Positions 3,381 through 13,151 of a stretch of DNA of 32,000 nt are shown in pieces. The stretch is from positions 390,001 through 422,000 of the forward strand of contig NW_008806283.1 in the NCBI RefSeq assembly GCF_000400465.1, read 5' to 3'. A program made the position numbers and the translations under genes. The notes beneath the pieces are model-generated. The model did not search any database. It was not told where the DNA came from and was given only the letters and a program-made list of their open reading frames with translations. How positions within the stretch are numbered: position 1 is the stretch's first letter; every line of letters begins with the position of its first letter. This DNA is from Wallemia ichthyophaga EXF-994 (Eukaryota; Fungi; Basidiomycota).

Positions 3381-3843
3381 TTTCAATCTGCTGCCTGTTT
3401 AACCATCAGCTATCCGGGGAATATGCCGTGAATACTACCTCCAGCCAGGCATACAACTGGCTATGAATATAGGTTTTACCATGTCCTACAATCCAAATCC
3501 AATGTCAAAGTCAATTCACAAACCTTGTATTTTTCTAGTTTCTGAGCTCAAACTTCTATTAAAGATGTTGTCAGCGAATTCATTTGTCATGAACTGCCCA
3601 ACAGCGTATGTACTCCTAAGAACACAATGCCTTAATGCCTTTCTCAACATTCTACATCATCTAAGCCATTACTGTAGCAGCTGCTGTGCCGTCTCCGTCG
3701 TGACATACGCTCTAAGCCGCAGTAAGGTGTATGTTCCGGATTCGACTGAAGAAACCGCATTCTTTGATTCTCATATATGTAACTTAAAAGGCTATTCAAC
3801 GTGCTCAAAACAGCAACCAATCAAATTACGCATATAAGTAAAT

Positions 3844-4786
3844 TGATGATGATGATGAAATTAAATATATTGTTAAGACAATACAAAAGTAATAACTGCG
3901 TCCATCAATACTTCCTAAAGTGTTGTATTTGAGAGAAGTGTTGATTAGAGTGGAAGTGTTTCTTGACTTATGTCGTAAAATAATTGGTGCCTCGTGTTTC
4001 TTCGAAAAATTTCTAGTTACATCGAAACACCTGGATTTCTTGCGCGTGTATTTATTTGTGGTTTGAAAAACTCGTATAGGGCTTGTAAAGCTTGCGCAAT
4101 TTTGAGAATTGGGCCTAGGTCGAACCTTATGTTTAGCTTGACTATTTTTCTTCTTAACGTGATTCTTGCCATCAAGTGTTTTTTTCTTCAGACGAAGATT
4201 CTGTGGGAAATGGTGTCGTCTACGCCGCATGTACTGCATCTCGGTGAGTCTATTATTTTGAATCGATGGCGATATGACTTAGTTATGAGGAGGTGCCCTG
4301 TGCGGAGCTGGGTGGCTAGGCAACTTGTTGCTCGTGGCAAGCCACTGAGTATCTTGGCTGTCTTTGCAGACGTCAGCTTGCCTGCCGCCGTTTTTGAGGT
4401 GTGAGACATGAGATCAGTCATACGTGAGGCTTCCACCCTGAGCGGGGCTGCGTAGCGCTTGCGCATGCTGCGTCTCATAGCTGAGAATGAAGTCCTCAGT
4501 GCAAAGTCAATAGTTGTGGTATGAGCTGTGGTTGTCCTTTCCTCATTTGCAGTTCTGTCCGCTAATTCCTTTCCGTAAATTTCAGTATGGCCTGGGATCC
4601 AATTCAGGTTGATGACAGGACTTTGGTTTCTTCTAATTGAATTTAGCTTTGTCACCTGCTCAAGTATTCTCATCACCAGGTATTGACCCGTCTTTGTTGA
4701 TTGCAGCTGAAACATGGCTGCCAGGGCCGCCTGGTTGTCCATGTGAATGATACTCATTTACAATGAATCGCCAGACAGCGTCGGTT
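3844..4786 (-). mobile_element. 5'-truncated non-LTR (LINE, Tad1/I-like) retrotransposon remnant: C-terminal half of RNase H, CCHC region, 3' UTR and simple-repeat tail
   Basis: ORF 4757-4188 has IHMDNQAAL, WIPGHTEIYGKELAD (RNase H end), TQLRTGH and C-x2-C-x7-H-x4-[stop]. The frame continues 56 codons past the TGA to TAA at 4019-4017. (TGA)5 at 3844-3858 reads (TCA)5 on the element strand. Boundaries are inferred from a candidate 7-bp duplication AGTAAAT. Confidence 0.8.
4017..4757 (-). pseudogene. Interrupted 3' end of the retrotransposon ORF2 (RNase H + zinc knuckle)
   Basis: In-frame TGA at 4190-4188 at the position of the 4th zinc ligand; no reverse transcriptase or endonuclease sequence is recognisable upstream. 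Confidence 0.75.
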
Positions 4787-4861
4787 AGTAAATAAATTTT
4801 TCACTTCATGACTATAGACGAGACACGTATATATTTCTAGAATCAATCCGTACATTATAAG

Positions 4862-4943
4862 TCGTGTATGGTGTAGTGGTTATCATATCGGTTTTTCACT
4901 TGAAAGACCACCGAAGAGCCGGGTTCGATTCCCGGTACGCGAA
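4862..4943 (+). tRNA. tRNA-Glu (anticodon TTC) with a 10-nt intron at 4899-4908
   Basis: Acceptor stem TCGTGTA/TACGCGA, D arm GTG..CAT, anticodon stem TCGGT/ACCGA, anticodon TTC at 4895-4897, T arm CCGGG-TTCGATT-CCCGG. The intron sits after position 37 and contains TGAAA, complementary to the anticodon loop. Mature length 72 nt. Confidence 0.92.
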
Positions 4944-4945
4944 CA

Positions 4946-4958
4946 TTTTTGCCTTTTT
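4946..4958 (+). terminator. RNA polymerase III terminator (two T5 runs)
   Basis: TTTTT at 4946-4950 and 4954-4958, just after the tRNA discriminator base. Confidence 0.8.
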
Positions 4959-5471: not shown

Positions 5472-7677
5472 TTACGGGCTAGAGAAAGGTGATGTCGGCC
5501 AACTAACTCTATACTGACCATGTCTCGATCCAGCTCTTGTGCTATCGTCATCGTCATCTTTGTTAGCTGATACTGCAAGTGCTTGCGGTAGTGAAAGCGG
5601 GAACAGTTGTCTAAAACGAGGATCAAATGCTGTGACGCTTTGTGTCGATGGAGGTGCTGTTGAAGAAGGTTTACTCATATCATTTATTATCTTTGACTCA
5701 GTCTGACGCATAATGTTGGAATCGTCAGTTGAGATTGATGATGATCTTCTCGGTATTGGGATTGGCTTCGAAGATGACGACCTCCGACTGAATTGCAGAT
5801 TGATTTCAGGTGATGGGCTCATCATTGGCGAGGACCCTGCACAGCAAGATCCTGCAAACCTGTGATGAGGATTTGCACCTGATATCGAGGATCTGTGTGA
5901 ACTTATGCCACTGATACCACCACCCTGGCTTGAAAACGACACATTTCTTGACATTGCCAGCGGTGAAGGTTGTGAGGGTTGTGGAGGGGATGCTTGCTCC
6001 GTTCTCTTCAACCATCTATATCGGTTCTTCTGACAGTGTTCCAAAACACCATTCAGTTCTGTAATTACGGTAAGCCTGAAGATGAATTAAGCGGGTAGTT
6101 GACCCACCTGGCAAGAAGTCGACTAAAACCTGGAACAGCGGCTGAACAAACATATCGATAAAGCCAACTTGAGATTTAGCTTGTGAGACTGGATCAGCAC
6201 TACTAAATACAGTGACAGGCAAGCTGAGCTGTGTCTCTAAAGCAGCCTGTTTAGCCCATTCTTCAAGTAAAGCCTTAGACCAATGTTCGCAAACGTGGTA
6301 CGGACGAGCAGGATTACTGATATCAGCACATTTTATCAGAGCTTGCAAAAGCAGAGTTCTATCTAAAGTATCATTGCTTTCTTTGCCTTTCAAGATACGG
6401 TCGCGCATCTCTGAAAGCATCTTCATAAAATCGAAGTGCAGACTCATGTCTGTAGCCAAAACAGTCTTTGACATCAAGTTGCGAAACTGTTTAGCATCGT
6501 GACTGCCTACTCCATCATTTGTCGGTGTTGTTGGGGTCGATGGGGAGTTTGGGGTTGCAGTAGCCATCGCTGTTACATCTGATTCAACCTTGGCTGAAGC
6601 TCTCCTCATTGCATTTCCATCATTCTCTTCATGCTTTGGCTCGTATTGACTTTTTGTTATATTGATTACGTCAAATGGCGTGAGCGATGAATTTGAAGAA
6701 GCACCAATGAGAAATCCGAGATTGTGTTTCCTGAGTAACTGTACGAGCAATATGCAATGCATATTCTCTAGAACTGACTTGGATTGATAGATTTCAGAGA
6801 GCGGGGTTTGAGCATTGTTCATGAAGGTATTATTCAAACCGGGGTGACCGACGTCGTGACCAATAGCAGAAACAAGTAGAGAGAGAACATCCCAGTCTGA
6901 AAGGAGCTTTGAGGCCAGACCATCTTCAGACCTTGACCACGGTTCTTTAGTGGTGAGCGTGTCGATCGGAGGAACGACCTTCAACATGACCAAAAAAGAG
7001 TAAGTTGCTTGTAAAACGTCAATAGCGTGGGTGTAGTTGTGATAAGCATTAGGAGCGCTGTATGACTTGCGAACGGCTATCAAGAAGGAACTGAATTGTG
7101 ATAACTTGAGGTGCCTTAAAGACGGTAACTGAAGAGAAGACTCCAAGATGATAACAGCGCAATGAAAGAGTTCTTCTTTATTCAGGGCGAGAGGTTGAAA
7201 CGCCCAAGTAGACAGCTTATGAATCAGATAAGCTTTGTTGGGAATTTCAATAGAGTCCTCAGAATTTGAGCGCTCGTCAAGCTTCTTGAGCTCTTCTTCC
7301 TCCTCCTCCTCGTTTAGGTGCTTAGACTTCTTGAACAAATCCCCGATAAGCTCACCCAGGCCATCGTTTGTGTCTTTGTTGGATCTAGCCAGACCACCGA
7401 CATCGACAGATTTCCTGCGATTGTCGATAGCCTCGTAAACGTTGAGTGTGTTGAAGCATATTGGGATAGTCTTTGTGGTGCTTGCAGAAGGCTGTTGGCC
7501 CGTAGCCCGTAATAGCGCGCGGTCTGAATTGCTCATTGCAGATCTAAACGGGATTTGCTGAGTTGTTTGAGTCGTTTGAATCGGTTGCTTTGGTGATGTG
7601 CCAGGGCTCGGACAATCATCCGAATTATGTGTAATATCATAATTATTCGGGAATTTATAGTCATTTAGCTCATTCAT
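5472..7677 (-). CDS. PDE2: Class I (high-affinity) cyclic-nucleotide phosphodiesterase, ~718 aa. Exons 7677-6108, 6058-5472
   Basis: YHNYTHAIDVLQ, HDVGHPGLNN, LATDMSLHF, CADISNPARP and QVGFI motifs. Intron 6107-6059 (GTGGGT..TACAG, 49 nt) restores LPELNGVLEHCQKNRYRW. The start is the first in-frame ATG; an extra 5' exon cannot be excluded. Confidence 0.88.
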
Positions 7678-7979: not shown

Positions 7980-10900
7980 ATGTTAGCAGATTTAGACCAT
8001 TATTCCAGCAATCTCACAAGCACGCAGGTCAGGCTTCTCTTTCGGCGGCGGCGGCACCGGCGGCTTTGGTTCTTCCGGCTCAGCCTTTGGCGGTAGCTCA
8101 ACTCCTGCGTTTGGTTCAGGCGGTTTTGGCCAGCAGCAATCACAGCAACCACAGCAACAGACAGGCGCTTTTGGCCAGCCAGCACAGACTCCCGCTTTCG
8201 GTGGGTGTTTATCTCTAGTTTTTGTTGAGCATCTCTCACTCTAAACCAGGCTCATCTGCTGGTGGTTTTGGGTCATCAGGCGGTGCATTCGGCCAGTCTA
8301 ATACCCCCTCTACTGGCTTATTCGGCGCTAGCAGACCTCCTCAGCAAGGCTCTGGTTTCTCTTTTGGCGGTGGTGGTTAGTTTGAGTGTATTCTTTATTC
8401 CCAGCTTACTCTTGCGAACAGCTTCAGCAGCCCCTGCAGCTCCACAAGCAAACCCATCTCCCTTCGGTGCACCTGCACCCGCTTCCACATCCACTTTCGG
8501 CCAGCCAGCTCCAACTGCCTTTGGTAGTTCTTTAGGTGCTGGCGGCGCATCTGCAGATGGTGAGCAGGCGCCGAATTCACTTTACCTGACTATACGGCTA
8601 AACTTTCTTCAGTCAAAGGCACAGACCCATTCGAAGTTAACCAGCGCGTCGAAGATCCAAAAGGACCAGACCGTATTACAGACAGGGTCAAGTTCCATTC
8701 AATTAACACTGAAGCCAAATTCCAGCCTTTCTCATTCGAGGAGTTGCGTATGATGGATTACGAAAGAGGCACAAGAAACTCCTCTCAAGCACCTTCTACC
8801 GGTGGCTTCGGTGCTTCTACTTCAGGCGGCTTTGGCAGCACATTTGGTGCTCCAAGCACCGGTAGCGCGTTTGGCCAGTCAGCCGGTACTGGCGCTGGCG
8901 CTGGCGGCTTTGGATCAAATACAGGCTCTACCGGTGGTGGATTGTTCGGTTCATCTCAGCCTCAACAAAACAGTGCCTTTGGTGGCTCCTCTGGTGGATT
9001 TGGTCAGTCGCAACCAAGTCAGCCAGCGGGTGGTGGAGGCTTGTTTGGCCAATCTAATACCCAATCCACGCCATTTGGTGGTGGCTCTACTGGTAGCGCC
9101 TTTGGGCAGCAACCTAAGCCTTCCCTATTTGGTACGTGATGATGATGCTCAGCTTAGTCAATACTTACACGAGTACAGGCTCTACATCAACAAACACTCC
9201 ATTTGGTGGCGCTGGCGGTGGTGCAGCTGGCGGATCTGCATTTGGTCAATCCAACCCACCTGCATCAGCACCATTCGGTCAATCTAGCACAGGAGGTGGC
9301 TTCGGCAGCAATACAGGTGCCAGCGGTGGTACAGGCTTCTCTTTCGGTGTGTAAACATACTTGAGATGTCAATTTTGCTTAAATTTCCAGGCCAACCTGC
9401 TAGTACTACCCCAGCAACTGGTGGATTCGGTGCTGCAGCACAACCAAGTACTGGTGGTGGCTTATTCGGACAAAGCGCACAAAAACCAGCGTTTGGTGGA
9501 GCTTCCTCAACACGTAGGTGAAGTGTTGTTCATTCTGATCGCCTAACACCTCTCAAAGCATTCGGTCAATCTTCCACTGGTGGTGGATTTGGTTCTGGTG
9601 CGACTGGCGGCTTTGGACAATCTCAACCGAGTCAACCACCTGCAGGAGGTGGTTTGTTCGGACAATCTCAGCCTAGTCAACCACCAGCTGGCGGTGGTCT
9701 GTTTGGCCAGCAGCAAAATAGCCAACAACAGCCAAGTAGTACAGGATTTGGAAGTGGTGGACTGGGTGGATTCGGCCAACAAAACAAACCAGCGACATCT
9801 GGTTTTGGTGGATTCGGATCTACCAACACTGGTGGTACTGGTGGTGGATTTGGTGCAGGTGCTAGTACTGGCGCTGGTGGCTTTGGTCAAAACCAATCAA
9901 ACACCGGCGCCTCTGGTGCTACTGGCGGCGGATTATTTGGTGGACAGCAGAACCAACAACAGCAGCCATCTACTGGTGGATTTGGCTCTGGAGGTAGTGG
10001 ATTTAGCTTTGGCCAAAACAGCCAACAACAGCAGCCACAACAACCAGCGCAACAGCAGCAGCCATCGAGTGGATTCAACTTTGGCGGTGGTTTAGGTGGT
10101 ACCCAGAACAAGCCAGCAACTGGAGGATTCGGCAGTGGCTTTGGCTCGAATACAGGCACAGGAGGATCTACTGGAGGTGGTGGACTTTTCGGTGGTGGCT
10201 TAGGATCATCAGCAAACAACAACAACACAGGAACGGGTGGTGGTGGACTGTTCGGCGGCGCTGCCAACAACACCTCAACTGGAGGTGGTCTTTTTGGTGG
10301 TGGTGGTGCATCTGCTGCTCCGAAACCAGCTGGTGGATTGTTTGGCAGCACCGGTACTGGAGGAGGGTTTGGTGGAGGGTTGGGACAGTCTTCGACTGCA
10401 CAACCTGCTCAAAACAACACTGGAGGCTTTGGCGGTGGCAGTTTGTTTGGACAGTCGACCCAGCAAAATTCACTTCAACAATCGCAACCAAATTTGAGTG
10501 CATCGGTCGATCAGTCACCTTACGGAGCCAATCCATTATTTGATCTGGGACCAAATCCACAGATTGGACCAACTGCCGTAGCGGTTGGAGGAGCATCAAC
10601 TGTGAACAAGAAAAAACCAGTGTTGAATGCATCAGCAAGTATGCGTTCACCAGCTAGACCTTTGAACAGACTGAGAGGATTCGCTGCATCACCAGGCACA
10701 CCAATTTCACCTTCAGCTGGTGTTAACTTGTCATCATCGGTGATGCCACCGTCTTCACCAAGCATGAGTGTGAACGGAGGAATGAGATCATCCCAAAGAT
10801 CATTGAATCTCTCAAGAGCTGGATCACCAGCTGCGTCGACGAATGGAGGAGTGTTGAGTGGATTGCCAAGCGAGAATGCCATGTCGCCAAATGCATTTAT

Positions 10901-11702
10901 GCCACGCTCATCAGTAAAAAAATTGGTGATTGATCGCAAACCTATACCAGATTCACCAAGCGCGGCAGCGTCAGGATCGCCTAATAGTCTCGCGCAGAGC
11001 AAGACGGGTGCAAAAGTCAGCTTCAATCCGCATCTTGAAAAAGCAGCACAAGACAGCCATAGCGTTGGCCTCGGCGATAGTATATCATCAACACCTCACG
11101 AAAATACACCACTGAAGACATCAAATACTTCACAATTCGTTAAGTCTACTACACCAACAGCCAGCCCACCACCATCAACAAATACACTCGGGTCATCAGT
11201 CGTCAGCGTAGAAGCATCACCGCAGATTGAGGAAGGCCACTACTACTCAATACCAAGTGTAGATGAACTAAACAAATACAGCTACAGGGAGCTGAAATCA
11301 GTAGAGGGATTGAAGGTCGGCCGAAAAGGATACGGTGAAATACACTTCCTTGAACCAGTCGATCTGACGACACTGGATGGATTGAATGAACTGACGGATG
11401 GACAACTCGTTGTATTTGAGAGCAGAGTGGCTTACGTGTATCCAGATGGAGTCGAAGAAGGCGAGGATAATCCAGAAAATGCACCACTCAAGCCAGCACC
11501 TGGACGTGGACTGAATGTAGCGGCTGAAATAGAATTAGAGGGCTGTTGGCCAAAAGACAAGGCGACTGGAGAGTATATTAAGGACGACTCGCATCCCAAG
11601 ACATTGTCGCATCTCAACAGATTAAAGAAAGTTTCTGGTACGACGTTTGTTAGCTACGAAAGCAGAATTGGTAGATGGGTATTCCAAGTGCCTGGATTCT
11701 GA
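7980..11702 (+). CDS. NUP98: GLFG nucleoporin of Nup98/Nup100/Nup116/Nup145N type, ~1130 aa. Exons 7980-7981, 8028-8200, 8250-8375, 8422-8559, 8613-9131, 9179-9346, 9391-9513, 9559-11702
   Basis: Many FG/GLFG repeats, GLEBS-like FSFEELRMMDYERG, SVDQSPYGANPLF, PRSSVKKLVID and a C-terminal autoproteolytic-type domain (VGRKGYGEIHFLEPVDLT..GLN..CWPKDK..GRWVFQV). Seven GT-AG introns of 44-53 nt; exon total 3393 nt = 1131 codons. Confidence 0.9.
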
Positions 11703-11776: not shown

Positions 11777-13151
11777 ATGCACGAGCGGCGTTTGAGCAAT
11801 ATGCTGCCTATGCATCGAGGATATACCACACACAATAAGAATAAGCCGAGTAGAGATGATAAGACTTCAGGAGACAGTAAACTCAAATGGAGGAATAGGA
11901 GGGTGGGGCGAGTAGCGCGAGTGGGGATGAAACTAATGCTAGTGGGTCTCGCACTCGGAGCAATATTATTCTTCTGGAGGTATGAGCTGCATATCGAGTT
12001 GGCCAAGTATAGGAGGGGCTGGGTGAAGACAACGATCAAGCAAACGGAACCGCTTGGCGGCTGCTTTGCGAGAGCGAGCGAGGATTACGAGTTGCGCCAA
12101 ATAACATCACCTAAATACAACCAGCTCCAATCTGGTTTATCTTACAAGCATGGTTTTGATTGCTACGGACACAGCAGACTGGTTCAGATGCAAGACGGTC
12201 AAGGTAAGGTGCGCTCGACTATTCATCTCTATTGGAGATCAGACATCGCTCCTCTCGGCTACAGAGAGAAAGTGCTTCTAGACTCCATTTTAGCTACCCA
12301 GGATCTTGATTTCGTTGATATTAAGCTATGGAGTAATGGCGATCTCCAACGCTTTAATGAGGAGTTCCTTGAACAGTATCTGCACGATTTTCCTCATCAC
12401 TTTAGTGTTGGTAATGTTGATCTCCATGGCTTGGCTAAGGGCACACCGCTCGAAGCGAGCGACAGACTGAATCTCAACGATCAGCGCGCTTGGCTGGATG
12501 GAGATGTTGTAAGGATACTGCTTTTGTGGAACTACGGTGGTGTCTGGGTCGACATGGATAGTATCCTCACGAGGGATCTTCAGCCACTGCTTGAGCACGA
12601 GTTTGTCACTCAATGGGATTGCTATGGTGGGCTTGATGTGCGTAGTTGTTAACTAAGCTAACCTCAAACACTAAGACAAACCTTACTCACCTTTGAACGG
12701 CGCAATGATGCATTTCAAAAAACACTCGCCATATCTCTGCGAAATGATGCACATAATGCAGTACGACCCAGAACCTCGCCAGGGATCGACAGACTGGGGA
12801 GCGCTGCTCTACCACAAGACACACCGTCGATTGTTAAACAACGATCCACCAATCAAGCCATTTGAAATATTGCCATACTGCTTCACTGATGGCAGGAGCT
12901 GCAGACTTGATAACAGGATATTGGATCCTTTTGAGAAGGACCCAAGTTATACTGACCTTCACTGGTTGCAGTTCAGAGAGAGGCTTTCGTCAATATTCGC
13001 TATACATCTACACGGCCAATACAGCAAAAAGATACCAGAAGATGGTTGGATGCAACGTGAAGTGATTGAGAATCACAGGCGCAAGATAACTAAGATTATT
13101 CCGCTAATGACATACCCTAAAACTGATACATTCAACAACTCGAACCTATAG
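11777..13151 (+). CDS. DXD-motif type II membrane glycosyltransferase (GT32-like), ~441 aa. Exons 11777-12626, 12676-13151
   Basis: N-terminal TM segment LMLVGLALGAILFFW, RILLLWNYGGVWVDMDSIL (DXD). Intron 12627-12675 gives QWDCYDKPYSPLNGAMMHF. Confidence 0.8.

What the first reader, a model, noticed from the sequence alone, without database searches (positions are those of the whole stretch)
3844..4943. LINE remnant sitting head-to-head ~75 bp upstream of a tRNA gene: candidate tRNA-targeted retrotransposon in a compact fungal genome
Seen: the only transposon-derived DNA in 32 kb of densely packed genes lies directly 5' of tRNA-Glu, on the opposite strand, with its truncated 5' end facing the tRNA 5' end (75 nt from the candidate junction at 4786; 104 nt from the first recognisable codon at 4757). 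Established: gene-dense genomes have evolved tRNA-upstream targeting (Ty1/Ty3 LTR elements in S. cerevisiae, the non-LTR element TRE5-A in Dictyostelium). Inference: this RNase H-bearing Tad1/I-like family may use Pol III genes as safe harbours, which I do not know to be described for basidiomycete LINEs. One copy cannot prove targeting.
Basis: partly seen in the sequence, partly recalled or inferred. Interest (0 to 1): 0.7.

Follow-up and report, generated by a model that had tools for sequence, protein, structure and literature searches.

The report
tRNA-targeting LINE remnant in Wallemia
A dead 943-base piece of a jumping gene (a LINE) sits 75 bases in front of a tRNA gene in the tiny genome of the salt-loving fungus Wallemia ichthyophaga. 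Nine of ten related pieces I could inspect in this species sit in the same place and direction in front of other tRNA genes. This fungal LINE family therefore very probably aims at tRNA genes, a habit so far described for LINEs only in social amoebae.

Summary
Window 4862-4943 (+) is tRNA-Glu(UUC) with a 10-nt intron. Window 3844-4786 (-) is a 5'-truncated, stop-containing 3' fragment of a non-LTR retrotransposon (end of the RNase H domain, C-terminal CCHC knuckle, 3'UTR, (TCA)5 tail). It is flanked by a 7-bp target-site duplication and its 5' end lies 75 nt from the tRNA 5' end.

All homologues are from Wallemia, so the window is W. ichthyophaga (9.6 Mb, 1.67% repeats). I fetched every long-contig homologue. 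In W. ichthyophaga, 9 of 10 fragments, at 7 independent Pol III loci (Glu, three Val-AAC paralogues, Gly, Lys, a rearranged Arg), lie head-to-head with the tRNA. The gap is 75 to at most 107 nt for two subfamilies and about 195-201 nt for a third. Two loci show nested or tandem re-insertion. The 3' flanks share no sequence.

This is the geometry of Dictyostelium TRE5-A, in an unrelated, RNase H-bearing LINE lineage.

Exceptions: one short fragment in W. ichthyophaga, three in W. mellicola, and one full-length metagenome copy have no nearby tRNA.

The reviews and searches I ran list tRNA-targeting LINEs only in dictyostelids, and only LTR elements in fungi. Targeting is inferred from old insertions; no empty site or new insertion was seen.

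The parts
3837..3843 (.). Target-site duplication, copy beside the LINE tail (AGTAAAT on the + strand)
   Evidence: An exact 7-mer directly abuts the (TCA)n tail and recurs at 4787-4793.
3844..3858 (-). Microsatellite tail (TCA)5, the 3' end of the LINE
   Evidence: Eight of the nine aligned related copies end in the same conserved ...GTCTTAACAATATATTTAGATT followed by TCA repeats; one (L004a) lacks the tail. L011, added later, ends in the same tail.
3859..4016 (-). LINE 3' untranslated region
   Evidence: blastn homology at 70-74% to the 3' ends of W. ichthyophaga and W. mellicola copies, running up to the tail.
4017..4786 (-). 5'-truncated ORF2 remnant: last third of the RNase H domain, a linker and the C-terminal CCHC knuckle. 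In-frame stop at 4188-4190; natural stop at 4017-4019. Corresponds to about aa 1020-1273 of the intact 1273-aa ORF2 of L011.
   Evidence: tblastn of L011 ORF2 aa 1031-1272 against window 4751-4023, 64% identity.
4787..4793 (.). Target-site duplication, copy on the tRNA side (AGTAAAT)
4794..4861 (.). 68-nt spacer between the duplication and the tRNA. It holds the tRNA's upstream promoter region, with TTATAAG at -11 to -5.
   Evidence: Read directly from the sequence. It shows no similarity to any LINE copy.
4862..4943 (+). tRNA-Glu(UUC) gene with a 10-nt intron after position 37 (about 4899-4908)
   Evidence: Rfam 52.4 bits. ARAGORN with introns: tRNA-Glu(ttc) i(38,10). The same gene is present in a second strain (L001).
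4946..4950 (+). T5 run, the likely Pol III terminator of the tRNA gene
   Evidence: Read directly from the sequence.

Best explanation
Window 3844-4786 is a dead, 5'-truncated copy of a LINE specific to the genus Wallemia.

The element: it is about 5.6-5.9 kb long. ORF1 carries CCHC knuckles. ORF2 carries an AP-endonuclease, reverse transcriptase, RNase H and a CCHC knuckle. A 3'UTR of about 170 nt ends in a microsatellite tail.

How the window copy arrived: it inserted by target-primed reverse transcription. The endonuclease nicked the tRNA-sense strand 68 nt upstream of tRNA-Glu, and the freed 3'-OH primed cDNA synthesis from the (UCA)n end of the RNA. Reverse transcription stopped inside the RNase H region, which produced the 5' truncation. 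A second nick 7 nt further upstream produced the 7-bp duplication.

Why it is there (inferred): the site was chosen by position, not by sequence. The family recognises the polar RNA polymerase III transcription complex (TFIIIB, TFIIIC or Pol III) assembled on tRNA genes. It integrates in one orientation in a window about 70-110 nt upstream; one subfamily uses about 200 nt. This lets it persist in a genome that is about three-quarters coding.

Shown here: the element's anatomy, the duplication, and the repeated position and orientation at many tRNA genes. Inferred: recognition of the Pol III complex, by analogy with TRE5-A ORF1 binding TFIIIB, Ty3 integrase binding TFIIIB and Ty1 integrase binding AC40.
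For: 1. Anatomy. See the observation check.

2. Intact relatives. L011 has an uninterrupted ORF1 that runs off the start of the contig (at least 488 aa) and an intact ORF2 of 1273 aa. L012 has complete ORF1 and ORF2 of 531 and 1253 aa. ORF2 has Exo_endo_phos_2, RVT_1 and RNase_H.

3. Other W. ichthyophaga fragments. Distance is from the tRNA 5' end to the first homologous LINE base, and all are head-to-head.
- L002/L010, Val-AAC: at most 84 and at most 80 nt.
- L003, a second Val-AAC paralogue: at most 81 nt.
- L003, Gly-GCC (Rfam 44.4 bits): at most 83 nt.
- L005/L006, Lys-CUU: at most 107 nt.
- L004, a rearranged tRNA-Arg(ACG): about 83-112 nt.
- L004, a third Val-AAC paralogue, subfamily B: at most 201 nt.
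- L005, a subfamily-B fragment nested in the older copy with a 13-bp duplication: 195 nt.
- L003, an ORF1 5' fragment 18 nt behind the tail of the tRNA-proximal copy.

4. Independence. Flanking genes differ at every locus. The three Val genes have different introns and different upstream DNA.

5. Variable truncation, similar distance. Truncation points differ (ORF2 aa about 912, 1020, 1031, 1081, 1103, 1184) while the distance to the tRNA stays similar. That is expected if the insertion point, not the element's length, is fixed.

6. No shared sequence in the 3' flanks.

7. Repeated insertion into one window. The newer copy lies next to the tRNA and the older one is pushed away by 13-18 nt.

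8. Three divergent subfamilies show the pattern. The window type is about 70% identical to type A, and type B has a (CTAT)n tail.

9. Statistics. With about 140 tRNA genes in 9.6 Mb, p per insertion is at most 0.006, so seven independent loci give p below 1e-15. The orientation alone, 9 of 9, gives p of about 0.004 (two-sided).

10. Precedent. [quoted passage not shown]
Against: - Only the window copy and the nested L005 copy have clean target-site duplications. The other distances are upper bounds taken from where homology starts.
- All tRNA-associated copies are old and fixed. The window copy is 98.8% identical between two strains. No empty allele and no new insertion was seen.
- Exceptions. 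A roughly 100-nt subfamily-C fragment (L002 11990-12087) lies 2.1 kb from the nearest tRNA, with no Pol III gene nearby. W. mellicola fragments L007b, L007 6766-6918 and L008 have no tRNA upstream. Full-length L012 has none within 520 nt of the ORF1 start.
- The youngest, apparently intact copies sit on 3-5 kb unplaced contigs, so their insertion sites are unknown. These are the subfamily-C copies, 99% identical between strains including the reference EXF-994, and the W. mellicola type.
- The sample is limited to fragments that were annotated as genes in draft assemblies.
- No protein-level evidence exists for contact with the Pol III machinery.
Confidence: 0.8

Rival explanations
1. Survivorship, not targeting. 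The LINE inserts at random, and in a genome that is about 75% coding only insertions in harmless tRNA-upstream DNA escape purifying selection.
For: The genome is extremely compact. All tRNA-linked copies are old. A few fragments do lie elsewhere.
Against: Selection cannot explain a single orientation in 9 of 9 cases. It cannot explain clustering at 75 to at most 107 nt, with about 195-201 nt for subfamily B, when intergenic spacers of several hundred nt were available. It also cannot explain re-insertion into the same short window. Only one W. ichthyophaga fragment lies in another kind of intergenic DNA.
Confidence: 0.1
2. Sequence-specific endonuclease. The element's AP-endonuclease cuts a short AT-rich motif that happens to recur about 70-100 nt upstream of Wallemia tRNA genes, without any contact with Pol III factors.
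For: The two sites with clean duplications were nicked after ...TAAAT and ...TTAA(A). LINE endonucleases often prefer AT-rich sites.
Against: No motif is shared by the 3' flanks of the copies that retain a tail. Upstream spacers of different tRNA genes show no similarity. AT-rich pentamers are everywhere in a 45% GC genome and would not give position or orientation specificity. One clean insertion is inside another LINE copy, 195 nt from the tRNA.
Confidence: 0.06
3. Coincidence or a structural artefact. Either the tRNA is part of the mobile unit (a chimeric retrocopy made by template switching, as in U6-L1 chimeras), or the adjacency is chance.
For: LINE reverse transcriptases can switch templates to small RNAs (general knowledge).
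Against: The tRNA genes are on the opposite strand and separated by unique spacers. They keep their introns, so they are genes and not retrocopies. They are of five to six different isoacceptor types, each with its own flanks. The chance probability is below 1e-15 (see best explanation).
Confidence: 0.02

Closest known systems
TRE5-A (and other TRE5 elements) of Dictyostelium discoideum
   Same: A non-LTR retrotransposon in a gene-dense genome. It inserts upstream of tRNA genes of any identity, always with its 5' end facing the tRNA 5' end. It has frequent 5' truncation and occasional target-site deletions (PMC3159450; PMC5006619).
   Different: TRE5 sits about 40-54 bp upstream; here the distance is about 70-110 nt, and about 200 nt for one subfamily. 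TRE ORF2 is APE-RT-zinc finger without RNase H, is listed as L1-type, and ends in oligo(A) (PMC5911963). The Wallemia element has RNase H and a (TCA)n, (CTAT)n or (TAC)n tail. The host is a basidiomycete fungus, not an amoebozoan. The TFIIIB contact is shown for TRE5-A and not tested here.
Pp_NLTR-B (Polysphondylium pallidum) and Dp_NLTR-A (D. purpureum)
   Same: RNase H-bearing non-LTR elements unrelated to TREs that independently acquired targeting upstream of tRNA genes: about 50 bp upstream for NLTR-B and 2-6 bp for NLTR-A (PMC5006619).
   Different: They are amoebozoan, use different distances, and I found no sequence relation. All homologues above 33% identity to the Wallemia ORF2 are from Wallemia or from unnamed metagenome contigs.
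Ty1 and Ty3 of S. cerevisiae, and Tj1, Tca8 and Ylt1-type LTR elements of other ascomycetes
   Same: Fungal retrotransposons that use Pol III genes as safe harbours. Ty1 inserts in a window upstream of tRNA genes; Ty3 inserts at the Pol III start site (PMC5911963).
   Different: These are LTR elements that integrate double-stranded cDNA with an integrase. They belong to the Ascomycota. Ty1 uses a window of up to about 1 kb upstream of the Pol III gene and inserts into nucleosomes (PMC5911963). The Wallemia element uses target-primed reverse transcription.
RNase H-bearing LINE clades of fungi and animals (Tad1, I and relatives)
   Same: Two ORFs; CCHC knuckles in ORF1; ORF2 with APE, RT and RNase H plus a C-terminal CCHC; a non-poly(A) repeat tail, as in I-factor-type elements (the last point is from my own knowledge).
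   Different: The clade was not determined. The nearest named relatives (Aspergillus, Sclerotinia) share only 24-33% identity. The two fungal LINE families whose targets my reading covered, neither of them of these clades, are Zorro (poly(A) tracts or subtelomeres) and Cnl1, a CRE-type element (PMC7175516). Telomere association of Cnl1 is from my own knowledge. Neither is described as tRNA-associated.

Membership tests
Non-LTR (LINE) retrotransposon with APE-RT-RNase H | Reverse transcriptase and AP-endonuclease domains in ORF2 | tested here: met
   Absent from the truncated window copy. Present in full-length relatives joined to it by continuous homology: L009, L011 and L012 have RVT_1 (E 5.7e-28) and Exo_endo_phos_2 (E 4.4e-16).
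Non-LTR (LINE) retrotransposon with APE-RT-RNase H | RNase H domain downstream of RT | tested here: met
   The window fragment keeps only the last third (Pfam E 0.04, model 107-139 of 141). P0007 gives 1.7e-10 and P0004 gives 1.3e-06 over the whole model.
Non-LTR (LINE) retrotransposon with APE-RT-RNase H | Hallmarks of target-primed reverse transcription: fixed 3' end with a repeat tail, variable 5' truncation, target-site duplication, no LTRs | tested here: met
   Conserved 3'UTR plus (TCA)n in eight of the nine aligned copies, and in L011. Truncation at ORF2 aa about 912-1184. A 7-bp duplication in the window and a 13-bp duplication in L005.
Tad1 or I clade (phylogenetic assignment) | RT-based phylogenetic placement with clade reference sequences | not tested
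The nearest named hits are at 24-33% identity.
tRNA-gene-targeted retroelements (functional class: TRE5-like) | Most copies lie next to tRNA genes, whatever the tRNA identity | tested here: inconclusive
   W. ichthyophaga: 9 of 10 fragments, at Glu, three Val, Gly, Lys and Arg-derived loci. W. mellicola: 0 of 3 informative fragments. L012: none within 520 nt. A whole-genome census was not possible.
tRNA-gene-targeted retroelements (functional class: TRE5-like) | Fixed orientation relative to the tRNA gene | tested here: met
   In all 9 tRNA-linked fragments the LINE 5' end faces the tRNA 5' end.
tRNA-gene-targeted retroelements (functional class: TRE5-like) | Narrow distance window | tested here: met
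   75, at most 80-84, at most 81, at most 83, about 83-112 and at most 107 nt. Subfamily B: 195 and at most 201 nt.
tRNA-gene-targeted retroelements (functional class: TRE5-like) | New integrations reproduce the preference; element protein binds TFIIIB, TFIIIC or Pol III | not testable with these tools
   Needs a marked-element retrotransposition assay and protein-interaction tests.
TRE5 family proper (Dictyostelium TRE lineage) | ORF2 architecture APE-RT-zinc finger without RNase H; oligo(A) tail; L1-type | tested here: not met
   The Wallemia element has RNase H and microsatellite tails. TRE architecture is taken from PMC5006619 and PMC5911963. It works like TRE5 but is not a member.
Nuclear tRNA gene (tRNA-Glu UUC) | Cloverleaf above the curated score, anticodon, canonical intron position, downstream T-run | tested here: met
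   Rfam 52.4 bits against 29. ARAGORN Glu(ttc) with intron i(38,10). T5 at 4946-4950. Conserved in a second strain.

The most novel reading that the evidence does not exclude
A LINE lineage restricted to Wallemia independently evolved integration directed by the Pol III complex: orientation-specific, about 70-110 nt upstream of tRNA genes, with one subfamily at about 200 nt. It would be the first tRNA-gene-targeting non-LTR retrotransposon in fungi and the first outside the Amoebozoa, and so a new case of convergence with Dictyostelium TRE5. Apparently intact copies still exist in W. ichthyophaga and W. mellicola, so the mechanism could be tested. The element's position could also flag unusual Pol III genes, such as the permuted or rearranged tRNA-Arg in L004.
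Probability: 0.6. Interest if true: 0.75.

Novelty: new variant of a known kind. Interest (0 to 1): 0.7.

Why it matters
Targeting of tRNA genes is the textbook 'safe harbour' strategy of retrotransposons in compact genomes. In fungi it is known only for LTR elements that use an integrase. For LINEs, which use target-primed reverse transcription, the reviews I read list it only in dictyostelid amoebae (PMC5911963, PMC5006619).

A basidiomycete LINE with the same geometry would be an independent origin in a third lineage and a different LINE clade. It would strengthen the view that compact genomes repeatedly select for recognition of the Pol III complex.

It would also provide a second system in which to ask how a ribonucleoprotein that nicks DNA reads the polarity of TFIIIB or TFIIIC. 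The different distances (about 50 nt in amoebae; about 75-105 and about 200 nt here) could reveal what sets the spacing, for example the TFIIIB footprint or the first upstream nucleosome.

On the practical side, the family is missing from the published W. ichthyophaga repeat annotation, which lists only tandem repeats and DNA transposons. Its fragments are currently annotated as hypothetical proteins.

Tried and rejected
1. Default ARAGORN and the Rfam gathering-score scan missed several intron-bearing tRNAs. Intron-aware ARAGORN and a focused Rfam scan corrected this.

2. Target-site duplications at the other loci: exact and approximate searches found nothing convincing for L002, L003a, L005 (outer copy) or L004b. 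Their distances are therefore upper bounds.

3. tblastn suggested that the L004a copy reached to 13 nt from the tRNA-Arg halves. Inspection showed that the first 35 aligned residues share almost no identity. The real start is about 10031.

4. W. mellicola fragments: I looked for tRNAs, half-tRNAs, B boxes or other Pol III RNAs upstream of L007b and L008. I used Rfam at E up to 5, ARAGORN at lowered thresholds and a B-box pattern. Only implausible low-threshold calls appeared.

5. Scan of JGI metagenome contigs for more loci: 203 pattern hits, none confirmed.

6. No RT-bearing copy from a named Wallemia genome appeared in the RT search. The cluster look-up later showed that such copies do exist, but on 3-5 kb contigs.

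7. Pfam finds no domain in ORF1.

8. Empty-site comparison between strains: the three loci seen in two strains all carry the insertion in both strains (window and L001, L002 and L010, L005 and L006), so no empty allele was obtained.

9. The chimeric-retrocopy idea was rejected, because the tRNAs lie on the opposite strand, keep their introns and are separated from the LINE by unique spacers.
Full report
**What is in the window.**
Rfam finds one RNA gene in the 32 kb: a tRNA at 4862-4943 (+), at 52.4 bits against a gathering score of 29. A T5 run follows at 4946-4950.

On the opposite strand, ORF 4191-4757 (189 aa) gives only a weak Pfam match to the last third of RNase H (E 0.04). A protein search, however, finds 20 homologues down to E 3e-113, and every named one is from Wallemia ichthyophaga or W. 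mellicola. The window is therefore from W. ichthyophaga. This is a halophilic basidiomycete with a 9.6-Mb genome, 1.67% repeats and about three-quarters coding sequence (PMC3849046).

The protein alignment shows that the reading frame continues past the stop at 4188-4190. That stop replaces the last Cys of a C-x2-C-x7-H-x4-C knuckle. The frame runs on to the family's normal C-terminus at 4020.

A conserved 3'UTR follows and ends in (TCA)5 at 3844-3858. The 7-mer AGTAAAT at 3837-3843 recurs at 4787-4793.

Of the eight large window ORFs scanned, seven are ordinary genes and one has no Pfam match. No other LINE-derived DNA was detected.

**What the element is.**
Related metagenome contigs carry full-length versions.
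- L011 has an uninterrupted ORF1 that runs off the start of the contig (at least 488 aa) and an intact ORF2 of 1273 aa.
- L012 has complete ORF1 (531 aa) and ORF2 (1253 aa).
- L009 carries most of an ORF2.
- ORF2 has Exo_endo_phos_2, RVT_1 and RNase_H followed by the CCHC knuckle. ORF1 has CCHC knuckles but no Pfam match.

The window copy corresponds to about aa 1020-1273 of ORF2. It is a typical dead, 5'-truncated product of target-primed reverse transcription. It is 98.8% identical over 2.2 kb to the same locus in another strain (L001), so it is an old, shared insertion.

Subfamilies differ in their microsatellite tail:
- (TCA)n for the window type, type A and the W. mellicola type;
- (CTAT)n for type B;
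- (TAC)n for the L009 lineage, which I call type C.

The nearest relatives outside this group share at most 33% identity. Clade assignment (Tad1, I or other) was not tested.

I fetched every homologue that lies on a long contig. I mapped all LINE-derived DNA in these loci with tblastn and blastn, using the full-length elements as queries. I mapped all tRNAs with intron-aware ARAGORN and Rfam.

In W. ichthyophaga the results are as follows. Distance is from the tRNA 5' end to the first homologous LINE base, and in every case the LINE 5' end faces the tRNA 5' end.

| Locus | tRNA | Subfamily | Distance (nt) |
|---|---|---|---|
| window / L001 | Glu-UUC | window type | 75 |
| L002 / L010 | Val-AAC | A | at most 84 / at most 80 |
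| L003 (9796) | second Val-AAC paralogue | A | at most 81 |
| L003 (16170) | Gly-GCC (Rfam 44.4 bits) | A | at most 83 |
| L005 / L006 | Lys-CUU | A | at most 107 |
| L004 (about 10031) | rearranged tRNA-Arg(ACG) | A | about 112 to its first intact base; about 83 to the inferred original 5' end |
| L004 (12880, minus strand) | third Val-AAC paralogue | B | at most 201 |
| L005 (nested) | Lys-CUU | B | 195 |
| L003 (10700) | second Val-AAC paralogue | related to the W. mellicola type (74% nt to L011; subfamily not assigned) | ORF1 5' fragment 18 nt behind the tail of the tRNA-proximal copy, so at most about 100 before that copy arrived |

The nested L005 entry is a 212-nt fragment inserted into the older type-A copy, with a 13-bp duplication. 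The L003 ORF1 fragment is described.

The loci have different flanking genes. The three Val genes have different introns and upstream DNA. These are therefore seven independent targets.

Truncation points vary from ORF2 aa about 912 to 1184 while the distance stays similar. That is expected if the insertion point is fixed. The 3' flanks share no motif.

In L003, L005 and apparently L011, a later copy lies between the tRNA and an earlier one. This is the signature of repeated use of one short window.

**Statistics.**
The genome has about 140 tRNA genes (11.55 kb of tRNA). A random site is within 210 nt upstream and head-to-head with p of about 0.0015, or about 0.006 if only non-coding DNA is allowed. 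Seven independent loci give p below 1e-15. The orientation alone, 9 of 9, gives p of about 0.004.

**Exceptions and limits.**
- A roughly 100-nt type-C fragment (L002 11990-12087) has no Pol III gene nearby.
- The W. mellicola fragments L007b, L007 6766-6918 and L008 have no tRNA upstream. L007a is cut by the contig end. The L007 fragments lie in an 8-kb stretch without called genes, at 32-39% GC.
- Full-length L012 has no tRNA within 520 nt of the ORF1 start, but its 5'UTR length is unknown.
- Only two clean target-site duplications were found.
- No empty allele was seen.
- Apparently intact, 99%-identical type-C copies exist in several W. ichthyophaga strains. One piece, of 993 aa, is in the reference EXF-994 and is annotated as 'RNA-directed DNA polymerase from transposon BS'. 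Pieces of the W. mellicola type occur in many W. mellicola strains. All of these sit on 0.6-5 kb contigs, apart from a few short fragments on long scaffolds of the reference CBS 633.66. Their flanks could not be read, because the contig look-ups were exhausted.

**Mechanism.**
Shown: insertion by target-primed reverse transcription. The first nick was on the tRNA-sense strand 68 nt upstream of tRNA-Glu and the second was 7 nt further upstream. The position and polarity are constant relative to many different tRNA genes.

Inferred: the integration complex recognises the polar Pol III transcription complex rather than a DNA sequence. The precedents are TRE5-A ORF1 with TFIIIB, Ty3 integrase with TFIIIB and Ty1 integrase with AC40 (PMC5911963, PMC3159450). 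I put this at 0.8.

Rivals:
- survivorship of random insertions (0.1; it cannot give one orientation and a narrow distance);
- an endonuclease motif (0.06; no shared motif);
- chimeric retrocopies or chance (0.02).

**Comparison with known systems.**
[quoted passage not shown] But the Wallemia element is not a TRE. It has RNase H, microsatellite tails and a larger spacing.

Dictyostelid NLTR-A and NLTR-B are RNase H-bearing LINEs that also target tRNA genes (PMC5006619). No sequence relation to them appeared.

The 2018 review's table lists tRNA-targeting non-LTR elements only in dictyostelids, and only LTR elements in fungi. It also notes that the target specificity of fungal LINEs is not elucidated (PMC5911963).

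Full-text searches for Wallemia, LINE or non-LTR together with tRNA targeting found no report. The W. ichthyophaga genome paper lists no retrotransposons.

I therefore rate this as a new variant of a known kind.

**Verdict.**
Interest is 0.7.

Noticed in passing
L004 9918-9843 (minus strand): The two halves of a tRNA-Arg(ACG) lie in permuted order: 3' half, then CTAC, then 5' half, then T4 and T5 runs. Joined in the normal order they give a perfect 72-nt cloverleaf. Rfam sees the region only as a weak Y-RNA-like (YrlA) hit. A D-arm-like remnant just 5' of the 3' half (shuffle p about 0.016) makes a rearranged tandem pseudogene at least as likely as a true circularly permuted tRNA gene. The review read lists such genes only in algae and an archaeon (PMC3978253). 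A LINE copy sits at the usual distance upstream of it.
   Followed up: partly
L012 about 6040-6061; L004 about 12235-12250; L005 about 10285-10291; L009 3993-4007; window 3844-3858: LINE subfamilies differ in the microsatellite at their 3' end, (TCA)n, (CTAT)n or (TAC)n, while the 3'UTR just before it is conserved.
   Followed up: partly
L005 10081-10291: A 212-nt subfamily-B LINE fragment is nested inside an older subfamily-A fragment, with a clean 13-bp target-site duplication TTAAGTCCAACGC. It lies 195 nt from tRNA-Lys in the same orientation.
   Followed up: yes
L003 10700-11400 and tRNA-Ala at 11471-11543 (+): An ORF1 5' fragment lies 18 nt behind the tail of another LINE copy. It breaks off about 70-110 nt before a tRNA-Ala gene that points away from it. 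This is an unusual 3' truncation whose origin (deletion or rearrangement at a second targeted site) is unexplained.
   Followed up: partly
Proteins P0145, P0151, P0152 and P0154 (W. ichthyophaga); cluster of P0024 (W. mellicola): Near-full-length LINE ORFs, 99% identical between strains, exist in W. ichthyophaga on unplaced 3-5 kb contigs; one piece, of 993 aa, is in the reference EXF-994. Pieces at least 90% identical to the intact P0024 occur in many W. mellicola strains. The family is probably still active, and short-read assemblies collapse it.
   Followed up: partly
L002 11990-12087: A short 3'UTR fragment of the L009-like subfamily has no Pol III gene nearby. It is the one W. ichthyophaga exception to the tRNA association. 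A G10 run lies just downstream of it.
   Followed up: partly
L002 9805-9907, L003 9612-9714, L004 13082-13184: Three tRNA-Val(AAC) paralogues have identical exons and each carries a 30-nt intron whose sequence differs between paralogues. Many Wallemia tRNAs have introns, which default tRNA finders miss.
   Followed up: partly
L003 1-57 (minus strand): The 5' part of a U2 snRNA gene (Rfam 56.3 bits) is cut off by the start of the contig.
   Followed up: no
L007 627-9086: An 8.4-kb stretch of W. mellicola DNA has no called genes, few ORFs and 32-39% GC. It holds three degenerate LINE fragments, two of them as inverted repeats.
   Followed up: partly
L011 5470-5537: Thirteen nt after the (TCA)8 tail of the full-length element, a 5'-truncated copy begins that is 100% identical to L011 4326-4380. 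This is either a real tandem insertion or an assembly join in the metagenome scaffold.
   Followed up: partly
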